A stretch of 63,667 bases of DNA, the filler included, from Octopus bimaculoides (Eukaryota), in the NCBI RefSeq assembly GCF_001194135.2. It is 5 parts of 4 records of this genome, joined end to end, with 100 filler letters (N's around TTAATTAATTAA, not from the genome) between each part and the next. Parts side by side here need not be neighbours in the genome. Positions count along the whole stretch, not along the records: positions 1 to 15,157 come from NC_069004.1; 4 more parts are not named here. One strand, given 5' to 3'. How positions within the stretch are numbered: position 1 is the stretch's first letter; every line of letters begins with the position of its first letter. Positions 10,587-11,072 of the stretch are shown piece by piece. The notes under the pieces are model-generated. The model worked only from the letters and a program-made list of their open reading frames with translations, had not been told where the DNA came from and searched no databases. The translations under genes and the position numbers were made by a program.

Positions 10587-10710
10587 ATAATAATAATAAT
10601 AATAATAGATAATAATAATAATAATAATAATAATAATAATAATAATAATAATAATAATAGTAATAATAATAATAATAATAATAATAATAATAATAATAAT
10701 AATAATAATA
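10587..10710. repeat. (AAT)n array
   Basis: Direct sequence. Confidence 0.95.
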
Positions 10711-10825
10711 CGGCCATATCACGCTGGGAGCACCGGTTCTCGTCCGATCACCGAAGTTAAGCAACGTCGAGCCTAGTGAGTACTTAGATGGGTGACCGCT
10801 TGGGAAACCTAGGTGCTGTAAGCAT
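10709..10825 (+). pseudogene. 5S rRNA-derived sequence forming the head of a retroposon
   Basis: tacggccatatcacgctgggagcaccggttctcgtccgatcaccgaagttaagcaacgtcgagcc..gatgggtgaccgcttgggaaacctaggtgctgtaagc matches metazoan 5S; first ~3 nt absent; no oligo-T terminator. Confidence 0.92.
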
Positions 10826-11072
10826 CCCACACATGGGGGCCCCACCTGCGAGGTCATGTGCTGTTTATCGTGATGTGAGATCACCATGTCGCACACATAT
10901 GGTTGTGATGCACGTGCCTAGTGTACCCTTATCAGATGGGTAGTCATGATGGGTATAATGGGCTTCGTATATTTTACCCCAGTGTCACTTTGATGGCATG
11001 CACTGCTCTCTCATGCAATAATAATAATAATAATAATAATAATAATAATAATAATAATAATAATAATAATAA
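10709..11072 (+). mobile_element. 5S-headed retroposon (SINE3-like or 5S-LINE chimera) with (AAT)n tail
   Basis: 5S head, ~180 nt unique body ending cactgctctctcatgc, then (AAT)n; AAT arrays on both sides. Confidence 0.7.

What the first reader, a model, noticed from the sequence alone, without database searches (positions are those of the whole stretch)
10709..11072. 5S-rRNA-headed retroposon inserted into an (AAT)n array
Seen in sequence: a nearly complete 5S rRNA copy with A-box-like and C-box-like segments lacks its first ~3 nt and the oligo-T terminator. It runs into ~180 nt of unrelated body and an (AAT)n tail, with pure AAT on both sides. Established: 5S-derived SINEs (SINE3) are rare compared with tRNA SINEs, and R4/Dong RLE LINEs target TAA repeats. 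Inference: this is either a SINE3 family driven by an AAT-targeting RLE LINE whose 3' end supplied the body, or a one-off 5S-LINE template-switch chimera. I do not know whether it has been described in cephalopods.
Basis: partly seen in the sequence, partly recalled or inferred. Interest (0 to 1): 0.78.

Follow-up and report, generated by a model that had tools for sequence, protein, structure and literature searches.

The report
5S-headed retroposon in AAT repeat
An octopus genome carries a retro-copied 5S ribosomal RNA fused to the tail end of another mobile element inside an AAT microsatellite; this is a known kind of element (a 5S-derived SINE or its one-off precursor), and I could not measure its copy number.

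Summary
Rfam's 5S model matches window 10706-10824 at 99 bits. The copy lacks the first 3-4 nt and any T-run terminator. It runs into 192 nt of non-5S sequence and a pure (AAT)19 tail, and (AAT)41 lies upstream.

New here: the last ~180 nt of the body are not unique. They form the 3' terminus of a longer, headless, AAT-bounded retroposon in Octopus sinensis (88% identity), and they also appear in two O. bimaculoides gene models. Thirteen nucleotides between the 5S end and this module remain unexplained.

The element sits in a same-orientation chain of AAT-tailed retroposons. The chain includes 3' fragments of an R2-superfamily (RLE, Dong/R4-like) LINE that end in (TAA)n. The orphon 5S rDNA reading is rejected.

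SINE family versus one-off template-switch chimera stays unresolved. That DNA held no second 5S/body junction, and all three other body copies lack the head. A 2026 Octopus vulgaris annotation lists four SINE/5S families (9.8 Mb), so family membership is slightly favoured (about 0.5 against 0.37).

It is a new member of a known kind, of moderate interest.

The parts
10586..10710 (+). Upstream (AAT)41 array with two G interruptions. It is the presumed target microsatellite, or the tail of an older upstream insert.
   Evidence: TRF; sequence.
10709..10824 (+). 5S rRNA-derived head, about 5S positions 4-120. By alignment, and using the Xenopus internal control region positions from my own knowledge: box A about 10754-10768 (AAGTTAAGCAACGTC), intermediate element about 10771-10776 (GCCTAG), box C about 10784-10801 (TTAGATGGGTGACCGCTT).
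   Evidence: Rfam RF00001 at 99.1 bits. 30 of 31 testable pairs intact, with one C.A mismatch. 88% identical to genuine 5S genes in L004. CpG observed/expected is 9/8.5.
10825..10837 (+). 13-nt linker TCCCACACATGGG of unknown origin, between the 5S 3' end and the shared 3' module. The first T may be the terminal U of 5S RNA, and homology to the parent may begin 3-5 nt earlier.
   Evidence: Break of homology in the alignments. The P0199 peptide suggests a slightly earlier start of homology.
10838..11016 (+). 3' module of about 180 nt, shared with a longer headless AAT-tailed retroposon family.
   Evidence: 88% identity over 188 nt to O. sinensis L021 24857-24670(-), with the same 3' terminus. 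Peptide matches to O. bimaculoides models A0A0L8FNT1 and A0A0L8IC31, which continue upstream as the long form.
10972..10975 (+). TTTT run inside the module, a potential Pol III terminator. It is conserved in the L021 copy.
11017..11073 (+). Pure (AAT)19, being the tail of the element plus any remainder of the target array.
   Evidence: TRF.
11074..11162 (+). Unidentified 89-nt segment between two AAT arrays, the next link of the chain. It is possibly a short 5'-truncated retroposon end.
   Evidence: No match in the window or in the loci.
11236..11343 (+). 3' part of the abundant octopus GGTTTC.. SINE, followed by (AAT)n(AAC)n(AAT)n at 11344-11493.
   Evidence: Repeat family D14; matches to O. 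bimaculoides loci.
11494..11866 (+). 5'-truncated 3' end of an RLE-type (Dong/R4-like) LINE. The ORF ends at about 11695 and is followed by a 3' UTR and an (ATA)n tail at 11867-11926.
   Evidence: The same family in L001 ends in (TAA)n. The L001 ORF matches R2 proteins in the PDB through RT, CCHC and KPD, E 2.9e-9.
11927..12215 (+). Second 5'-truncated Dong/R4-like LINE 3' end, followed by (AAT/GAT)n.
12255..12474 (+). Near full-length copy of the GGTTTC.. SINE, followed by (CAA)n.
1109..1321 (+). Full-length GGTTTC.. SINE lying between (AAC)(AAT)n and (AAT)(GAT)n. It shows the same AAT-on-both-sides anatomy.

Best explanation
The element is a retroposed fusion with four parts: a nearly full-length 5S rRNA head (internal type-1 Pol III promoter region present, terminator absent), a 13-nt linker, the last ~180 nt of another AAT-tailed octopus retroposon, and an (AAT)n tail. 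Most likely it is one copy of a 5S-headed SINE (SINE3 type). The proposed mechanism is inferred, not shown. A master copy is transcribed from the 5S promoter through the body and the AAT tail. The protein of a TAA-repeat-specific RLE LINE (Dong/R4-like) nicks an (AAT)n array. The (UAA)n of the RNA anneals to the nicked strand and primes reverse transcription. The copy then lands in the same orientation as the array, with AAT on both sides, no recognisable target-site duplication, and a slightly truncated 5' end. The family would have been founded by a template jump of the LINE reverse transcriptase from a parent-retroposon RNA onto the 3' end of 5S rRNA. Anatomy and context are shown. Transcription, the partner LINE and family status are inferred.
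For: The head is a structurally intact 5S with no terminator (contrast L004). The fusion point lies at the natural 3' end of 5S RNA (..AAGCA(U)), and no AAT units separate head from body, so both entered as one cDNA. The body is the 3' terminus of an independent AAT-tailed retroposon family found in two octopus species, which is the classical SINE layout of head plus a 3' module shared with another retroposon. One unselected hit in 135 kb suggests that this module has thousands of copies. The window is a chain of at least 8 A-rich trinucleotide arrays, all on the + strand, separating retroposons that are all in + orientation. The chain includes RLE-type LINE 3' ends with TAA-type tails. The same chain anatomy occurs on another O. 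bimaculoides chromosome (L016). From the literature: Dong elements target TAA microsatellites, including in the snail Biomphalaria (PMC3812793); Dong-R4 is the second largest LINE group in O. vulgaris (92.7 Mb) and has recently active families; four SINE/5S families covering 9.83 Mb are annotated there (PMC13282606); about 24,000 5S-derived loci are reported in Architeuthis (PMC6962438). The window copy is little decayed: it keeps 5 CpGs that the L021 copy has lost, the head shows no CpG depletion, and the tail is pure.
Against: No second copy with the same 5S/linker/body junction was found. There was none in about 135 kb of O. bimaculoides and O. sinensis DNA, and none among proteins of public collections searched with ORFs that span the junction. 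All three other copies of the body module are the long, headless form. A TTTT run 41 nt before the 3' end of the body, conserved from the parent, should stop many Pol III transcripts before the tail. One of the O. vulgaris '5S' families has insertions of about 6 kb each (42,242 bp in 7 insertions), so that label may not always mean a true SINE. The parent is not shown to be a LINE. Partner identity rests on co-location and tail type only.
Confidence: 0.5

Rival explanations
1. The element is a one-off or very-low-copy chimeric retrocopy. During target-primed reverse transcription of a parent AAT-tailed retroposon RNA at an (AAT)n site, the LINE reverse transcriptase jumped onto the 3' end of a mature 5S rRNA about 190 nt from the parent's 3' end and copied it almost to its 5' end. 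The product was never amplified.
For: The junction is exactly at the 5S RNA 3' end, and the 3' part is an internal-to-3' piece of a longer element. That is the anatomy of known small-RNA/LINE chimeras. The 3 other sampled copies of the module are all headless. The parent's TTTT is retained. The head's nearly intact 5S fold fits a direct copy of real 5S rRNA followed by decay similar to the ~3-4% estimated for the body from four copies. R2-type reverse transcriptases are known template jumpers that add a few untemplated nucleotides (my own knowledge, Bibillo and Eickbush).
Against: 5S-derived repeats are reported in thousands of copies in coleoids, so a random 5S-like locus is more likely to belong to a family. 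The 13-nt linker is long for untemplated addition. The sample of other copies is tiny (one unbiased, two from gene models).
Confidence: 0.37
2. There were two independent insertions. A 5'-truncated parent retroposon inserted into the AAT array first, and a tailless 5S retropseudogene later landed exactly at its 5' edge.
For: AAT arrays are the recurrent target in this region.
Against: Every other junction in the chain has AAT-type units between neighbouring elements. Here there are none between the 5S and the body. A 5S cDNA with no AAT tail would also need a different priming mode.
Confidence: 0.05
3. The element is an orphon 5S rDNA unit, that is, a gene plus its native spacer moved as DNA.
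For: The 5S is nearly complete and is followed by non-5S sequence.
Against: There is no T-run terminator, the first 3-4 nt are missing, and it is bounded by AAT arrays. The 'spacer' is a dispersed retroposon 3' end that is found without any 5S in O. sinensis and O. bimaculoides. A real 5S array (L004) looks quite different.
Confidence: 0.02
4. The element is as in the best explanation, but the mobilising LINE is not Dong/R4. It is another octopus LINE with a microsatellite tail, for example RTE.
For: RTE is the largest LINE group in octopus, and RTE-2_OV has a microsatellite right after its ORF (PMC9115989). The body shares no sequence with the Dong-like 3' UTRs in the window.
Against: The only LINE ends seen next to AAT arrays here and in L016 are RLE-type. 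TAA targeting is documented for Dong.
Confidence: 0.3

Closest known systems
SINE3 of zebrafish (Kapitonov and Jurka 2003) and other 5S-derived SINEs (MEG-RS/RL and Ped-1 in mammals, HaSE3 and relatives in Lepidoptera, 5S-headed DeuSINEs)
   Same: 5S rRNA-derived head with the internal promoter region, no terminator after the head, an unrelated body, and a 3' part shared with another retroposon.
   Different: Here the tail is an (AAT)n microsatellite, the insertion is inside an AAT array, and the likely partner is an RLE (Dong/R4-like) LINE rather than CR1/L2, L1 or RTE. Family status is unproven. A 2024 review lists 5S SINEs only for reptiles, insects, fish and mammals (PMC10946416).
'SINE/5S' families annotated in Octopus vulgaris (Bonar et al. 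2026, PMC13282606) and the ~24,000 5S-derived loci of Architeuthis dux (PMC6962438)
   Same: 5S-related dispersed repeats in coleoid cephalopods. They are probably the same kind of element, and possibly the same family.
   Different: Only counts and coverage are published in what I could read.
LINE-mediated chimeric retrocopies of small RNAs (U6, 5S or 7SL fused to an L1 or mRNA 3' part; Buzdin et al., cited in PMC4824008)
   Same: A full-length small RNA is fused at its 3' end to a 5'-truncated retroposon 3' part, with one tail and a single insertion event.
   Different: Those are L1 (APE) products with poly(A) tails and target-site duplications. Here the tail is AAT, the site is a microsatellite, and the enzyme is presumably of R2 type.
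Dong (Bombyx mori) with DongAg and DongBg, R4-clade RLE LINEs specific for (TAA)n
   Same: The LINE 3' fragments in the window have RT, CCHC and a PD..D..K-like C-terminus, TAA-type tails, and sit in AAT arrays.
   Different: Clade placement was not tested phylogenetically. No Dong-dependent SINE has been described, to my knowledge.

Membership tests
5S-derived SINE (SINE3 type) | 5' head homologous to 5S rRNA, including the box A, IE and box C region | tested here: met
   Rfam RF00001 at 99.1 bits, model 1-120. The boxes are located by alignment. Box C differs from L004 at two positions, which form a compensating A-U pair by my reading of helix IV.
5S-derived SINE (SINE3 type) | No Pol III terminator between head and body, and none inside the element | tested here: inconclusive
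   There is no T run after the head. However, a TTTT lies at 10972-10975 inside the body, conserved from the parent.
5S-derived SINE (SINE3 type) | 3' region shared with the partner LINE | tested here: inconclusive
   The last ~180 nt are shared with a longer AAT-tailed retroposon. That element has no ORF and no RNA head in 540 nt, so its LINE nature is not shown.
5S-derived SINE (SINE3 type) | Many dispersed copies with the same head/body junction | tested here: inconclusive
   None found in about 135 kb of octopus DNA and none in protein collections.
5S-derived SINE (SINE3 type) | Pol III transcription from the head | not testable with these tools
Template-switch chimeric retrocopy | Small RNA joined at its own 3' end to a 5'-truncated retroposon or mRNA 3' part, with one tail | tested here: met
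   The junction is at ..GCTGTAAGCA(T). The homolog of the body is internal to a longer element in L021.
Template-switch chimeric retrocopy | Unique locus (not amplified) | tested here: inconclusive
   No second junction was seen, but the sample is only about 135 kb.
Dong/R4-clade RLE LINE (for the LINE fragments in the chain) | RT followed by a CCHC motif and a C-terminal restriction-like endonuclease | tested here: met
   The L001 ORF, of the same family as window 11494-11866, matches R2 proteins 9nl2, 9nl3 and 9dou at E 2.9e-9 through RT, CCHC and KPD. The PDIVV..LID..K..KY motif is visible in P0010, P0024 and P0045. Pfam finds RVT_1.
Dong/R4-clade RLE LINE (for the LINE fragments in the chain) | Insertion in (TAA)n with a TAA-type 3' tail | tested here: met
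   Window fragments A and B, L001 and L016.
Dong/R4-clade RLE LINE (for the LINE fragments in the chain) | Phylogenetic placement in the R4 clade rather than R2, NeSL or Hero | not tested
   No RT phylogeny was made. The name rests on the target and on published octopus annotations.
5S rDNA orphon | Gene with its terminator and native spacer, usually tandem | tested here: not met
   There is no terminator and the 5' end is truncated. The 'spacer' is a dispersed retroposon module. Compare the real array in L004.

The most novel reading that the evidence does not exclude
This would be a copy of an amplified 5S-headed SINE family that is mobilised by a TAA-microsatellite-specific RLE (Dong/R4) LINE. 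It would be the first formally characterised 5S SINE in Lophotrochozoa. It would also be the first SINE shown to ride a site-specific R2-superfamily element, building same-orientation chains of retroposons inside AAT arrays in octopus genomes.
Probability: 0.3. Interest if true: 0.55.

Novelty: new member of a known kind. Interest (0 to 1): 0.36.

Why it matters
5S-derived SINEs are rare and arose independently several times. Each new case shows how a Pol III promoter gets coupled to a LINE recognition module. If this element is an amplified family, it would link a 5S head to a microsatellite-targeting R2-superfamily LINE. That would help explain why octopus genomes are so rich in both SINEs (about 12%) and simple repeats (about 7%): tails become targets, and insertions pile up in oriented chains. 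If it is a one-off, it is a snapshot of the founding event of such a family, namely a template jump onto 5S rRNA. Either way it is an incremental addition to known biology, not a new mechanism.

Tried and rejected

2. A protein search with the antisense ORF spanning body and 5S returned only ordinary 5S genes with terminators. One of them, L004, is a genuine 5S array with a 241-bp unit from an unknown ENA sample. It was useful as a yardstick but is not octopus.

3. The junction 18-mer scanned in JGI metagenomes and GTDB genomes gave only chance matches of 18-22 nt.

4. ENA loci fetched through LINE-tail proteins (L001-L003, L005 and L006) are not octopus. They share no SINE with the window.

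5. The whole-element RNA fold is no better than shuffles (z = 0.35). The two-sequence consensus fold of the body shows no compensatory pairs.

6. ARAGORN finds no tRNA in the window. I therefore do not call the abundant GGTTTC.. SINE tRNA-derived on my own evidence.

7. A permissive Rfam scan of the L021 parent element finds no small-RNA head.

8. P0198 is a translated satellite and a spurious hit.

9. The bacterial promoter/terminator scan is irrelevant to a eukaryote.

10. The many miRNA-family hits are all far below gathering scores and lie on TG/TA low-complexity sequence.

11. The Octopus 5S rRNA reference (PMC326244) and the 2015 genome paper (PMC4795812) are not held. The head could therefore not be compared with the host's own 5S.

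Full report
**Observation.** The sequence and Rfam's covariance model (RF00001, 99.1 bits against a gathering score of 38, E 5e-21, model positions 1-120) confirm a 5S rRNA-like segment at window 10706-10824 on the + strand. True 5S letters start at 10709/10710 ((T)ACGGCCATAT). The first 3-4 nt of helix I are occupied by AAT units. Of the 34 model pairs, three are lost to this truncation. Of the other 31, 30 are standard pairs and one is a C.A mismatch. The segment ends ..GCTGTAAGCA(T) and continues as CCCACACATGG.. with no T run. Genuine 5S genes fetched for comparison (L004, a 241-bp tandem unit from an unknown ENA sample) end ..GCTGTAGACTTTTGA. TRF gives (AAT)41 at 10586-10710 (96% matches) and a pure (AAT)19 at 11017-11073. 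The 192-nt body (10825-11016) has no other copy in the window.

**Source organism.** The window shares an abundant SINE (starting GGTTTC..), an LTR-retrotransposon pol and other repeats with loci of Octopus bimaculoides GCA_001194135.2 (L016, L018, L019). It also contains N gaps, as that assembly does. I treat it as O. bimaculoides or a very close relative.

**What the body is.** A blastn of the body against about 135 kb of O. bimaculoides and O. sinensis DNA, fetched through transposon proteins, gave one strong hit. Window 10838-11025 matches O. sinensis L021 24857-24670 (minus strand) at 88% identity.

- In L021 the homologous ~180 nt are the 3' terminus of a longer insert of about 540 nt. 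That insert begins right after an (AAT)7 array and ends ..GCACTGCTCTCTCACTC followed by AATAAT and then a copy of the GGTTTC.. SINE.
- The longer element has no ORF, no Dong-tail peptide, and no 5S or other small-RNA head, even in a permissive Rfam scan.
- A full HMMER scan of 1.84 billion representative proteins, using the window ORF that spans head, linker and body, found two real hits. These are the O. bimaculoides models A0A0L8FNT1 and A0A0L8IC31. Both continue upstream with the long-form sequence (..LIQGPFE.DGLL.LKKILTG.. and ..PYSGTFSARWTTQPEENSNW..), not with 5S.
- The body is therefore the 3' module of a dispersed, AAT-tailed retroposon family present in at least two octopus species.
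- One unselected hit in 135 kb implies thousands of copies (rough estimate; a 95% lower bound of about 10^3).
- Homology breaks at about 10837/10838. This leaves 13 nt (TCCCACACATGGG) between the 5S end and the module unexplained. Part of it may be the terminal U of 5S RNA and a few parent nucleotides.

**Age.** The window copy keeps five CpGs that are TG or CA in L021. It differs from a four-copy consensus peptide at about 3 of 34 residues. The head has CpG observed/expected of 9/8.5 and the tail is pure. The copy is therefore fairly young.

**Context.** The element is one link in a chain. From 10586 to about 12510 the order is:

- (AAT)41
- the 5S element
- (AAT)19
- an unidentified 89-nt piece
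- (AAT)24
- the 3' part of the GGTTTC.. SINE
- (AAT)(AAC)(AAT) arrays
- a LINE 3' fragment
- (ATA)20
- a second LINE 3' fragment
- (AAT/GAT)n
- a nearly full SINE
- (CAA)n

Another full SINE at 1109-1321 also lies between AAT-type arrays. All A-rich trinucleotide arrays are on the + strand and all inserts are in + orientation. The same anatomy is seen on another O. bimaculoides chromosome, L016: (AAT)n, LINE 3' fragment, (ATA)(GAT)n, SINE, (GTA)n. In this genome the tail of one retroposon appears to serve as the target for the next, in a fixed orientation.

**The LINE.**

- The fragments at 11494-11866, 11927-12215 and 2223-2381 encode the C-terminus ..MWHLK..IPVIVGALG..LQKIVLTGT..LRRALSL.
- Relatives extend upstream into ..ILWDF..TDR.I.AN.PDIVV..C.LID...P.D.N..KE..K..KY... 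I read this as a PD-(D/E)xK restriction-like endonuclease.
- A contig of the same family (L001, 72% nucleotide identity to fragment A) ends in (TAA)n. Its 449-aa ORF has RVT_1. It matches only R2 retrotransposon proteins in the PDB (E 2.9e-9), and the alignment runs through the RT, the CCHC knuckle and the KPD of the endonuclease.
- It is therefore an R2-superfamily RLE LINE with TAA tails sitting in TAA arrays, which is the description of Dong (R4 clade).
- The literature agrees. Dong elements of Bombyx, Anopheles and the snail Biomphalaria target TAA microsatellites (PMC3812793). Dong belongs to the R4 lineage (PMC3774820). A full-length Dong is in the O. bimaculoides library (PMC9115989). 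Dong-R4 covers 92.7 Mb of O. vulgaris, with 1,129 recent insertions (PMC13282606).
- I made no phylogeny, so the clade name is inferred.

**Mechanism.** Head and body are joined with no AAT units between them, unlike every other junction in the chain, so they entered as one cDNA. The join is at the natural 3' end of 5S RNA, and the body is an internal-to-3' piece of a longer RNA. That is the signature of a reverse transcriptase jumping from one template onto the 3' end of a small RNA. R2-type enzymes do this readily (my own knowledge). Such a jump is also the accepted origin of composite SINE heads (PMC4824008). Insertion into (AAT)n in the array's orientation, with AAT on both sides, fits cleavage of a TAA array followed by priming through annealing of the RNA's (UAA)n to the nicked strand. 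These steps are inferred from anatomy. None was observed.

Metagenome and prokaryote scans gave chance hits only. The protein collections hold only annotated octopus models.

- For a family: the layout is classically SINE-like, and 5S-derived repeats are reported in coleoids in large numbers. There are about 24,000 loci in Architeuthis and four SINE/5S families covering 9.83 Mb in O. vulgaris. At those numbers, finding no other 5S in my 135 kb has a probability of about 0.2-0.3, so it is uninformative.
- Against a family: all three other copies of the module are headless, although only the L021 hit came from unselected DNA and the other two from annotated gene models. The parent's TTTT at 10972-10975 is retained and should terminate many Pol III transcripts before the tail. 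One of the published '5S' families has insertions of about 6 kb, so that label is not proof of true SINEs.
- I put family membership at about 0.5, a single or very-low-copy chimera at about 0.37, adjacent independent insertions at about 0.05, and an rDNA orphon at about 0.02.
- Separately, I put the chance that the partner is Dong/R4 rather than RTE or another tailed LINE at about 0.6-0.7.

**Comparison and novelty.** The element works like SINE3 and other 5S-derived SINEs, or like a small-RNA/LINE chimera. It differs in three ways: the AAT tail, the microsatellite target, and the probable RLE partner. A 2024 review lists 5S SINEs only for reptiles, insects, fish and mammals. Cephalopod genome papers already count 5S-derived repeats without describing them. 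I therefore rate it a new member of a known kind, of moderate interest. The interest would rise if a Dong-driven 5S SINE family is confirmed.

Noticed in passing
window 10586-12510; also 1031-1411; L016 21150-21830 (minus strand): There are oriented chains of retroposons separated by A-rich trinucleotide arrays (AAT, AAC, GAT, GAA). All arrays and all inserts lie on one strand. This suggests that tails are reused as targets. The 15-kb window has about 8 such arrays, against 0-2 per 20-33 kb in six other octopus loci.
   Followed up: partly
window 11074-11162: An 89-nt segment lies between two AAT arrays and matches nothing in the window or in any fetched locus. It is possibly a very short 5'-truncated retroposon end.
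   Followed up: partly
window 1680-2800: This stretch holds degenerate LINE pieces: an RT C-terminal motif at about 1680-1860, and two different copies of the RLE-LINE C-terminal tail at 2223-2381 and about 2560-2760. It ends in (AAC)n and (GAA)23 rather than AAT, so related LINE families may carry different trinucleotide tails.
   Followed up: partly
window about 4800-7300 (minus strand): A degenerate LTR-retrotransposon pol (RT, RNase H, integrase; 'K02A2.6-like') with several frameshifts. It is 77-83% identical in DNA to copies in O. bimaculoides L018 and O. sinensis L017.
   Followed up: partly
window 3652-3723 and 3734-3805: A perfect 72-nt direct repeat lies on either side of a 10-N gap (3724-3733). 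This is almost certainly an assembly or gap-closing artefact.
   Followed up: no
window 9649-10274: The 'inverted repeats' of about 300 nt reported by the repeat finder are centred on the 466-N gap (9729-10194) and on flanking TA repeats. They are an artefact.
   Followed up: no
window 14722-14955: An ORF with a Tc1/mariner-like helix-turn-helix N-terminus (..LDFQRGQIVGARMAGASITKTTEMLG..). This is recognised by eye only.
   Followed up: no
window 10727-10731 (5S loop B and helix II): Three clustered transitions relative to the conserved GUUGAAAGC, giving GCUGGGAGC, account for the only broken pair and for a G at a highly conserved A. Two are A-to-G changes, which in an octopus raises the untested idea of ADAR editing of the RNA before reverse transcription.
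   Followed up: no
L004 1-800 (minus strand): Genuine 5S rDNA with a 241-bp tandem unit and a third truncated copy, on a 3.2-kb contig of ENA sample ERZ27264478. Organism unknown. The second copy has several broken helix I pairs.
   Followed up: partly
window 3322-3565: A long imperfect (GAT/GAC)n array reads as poly-Asp on the + strand. There is no evidence that it is coding.
   Followed up: no
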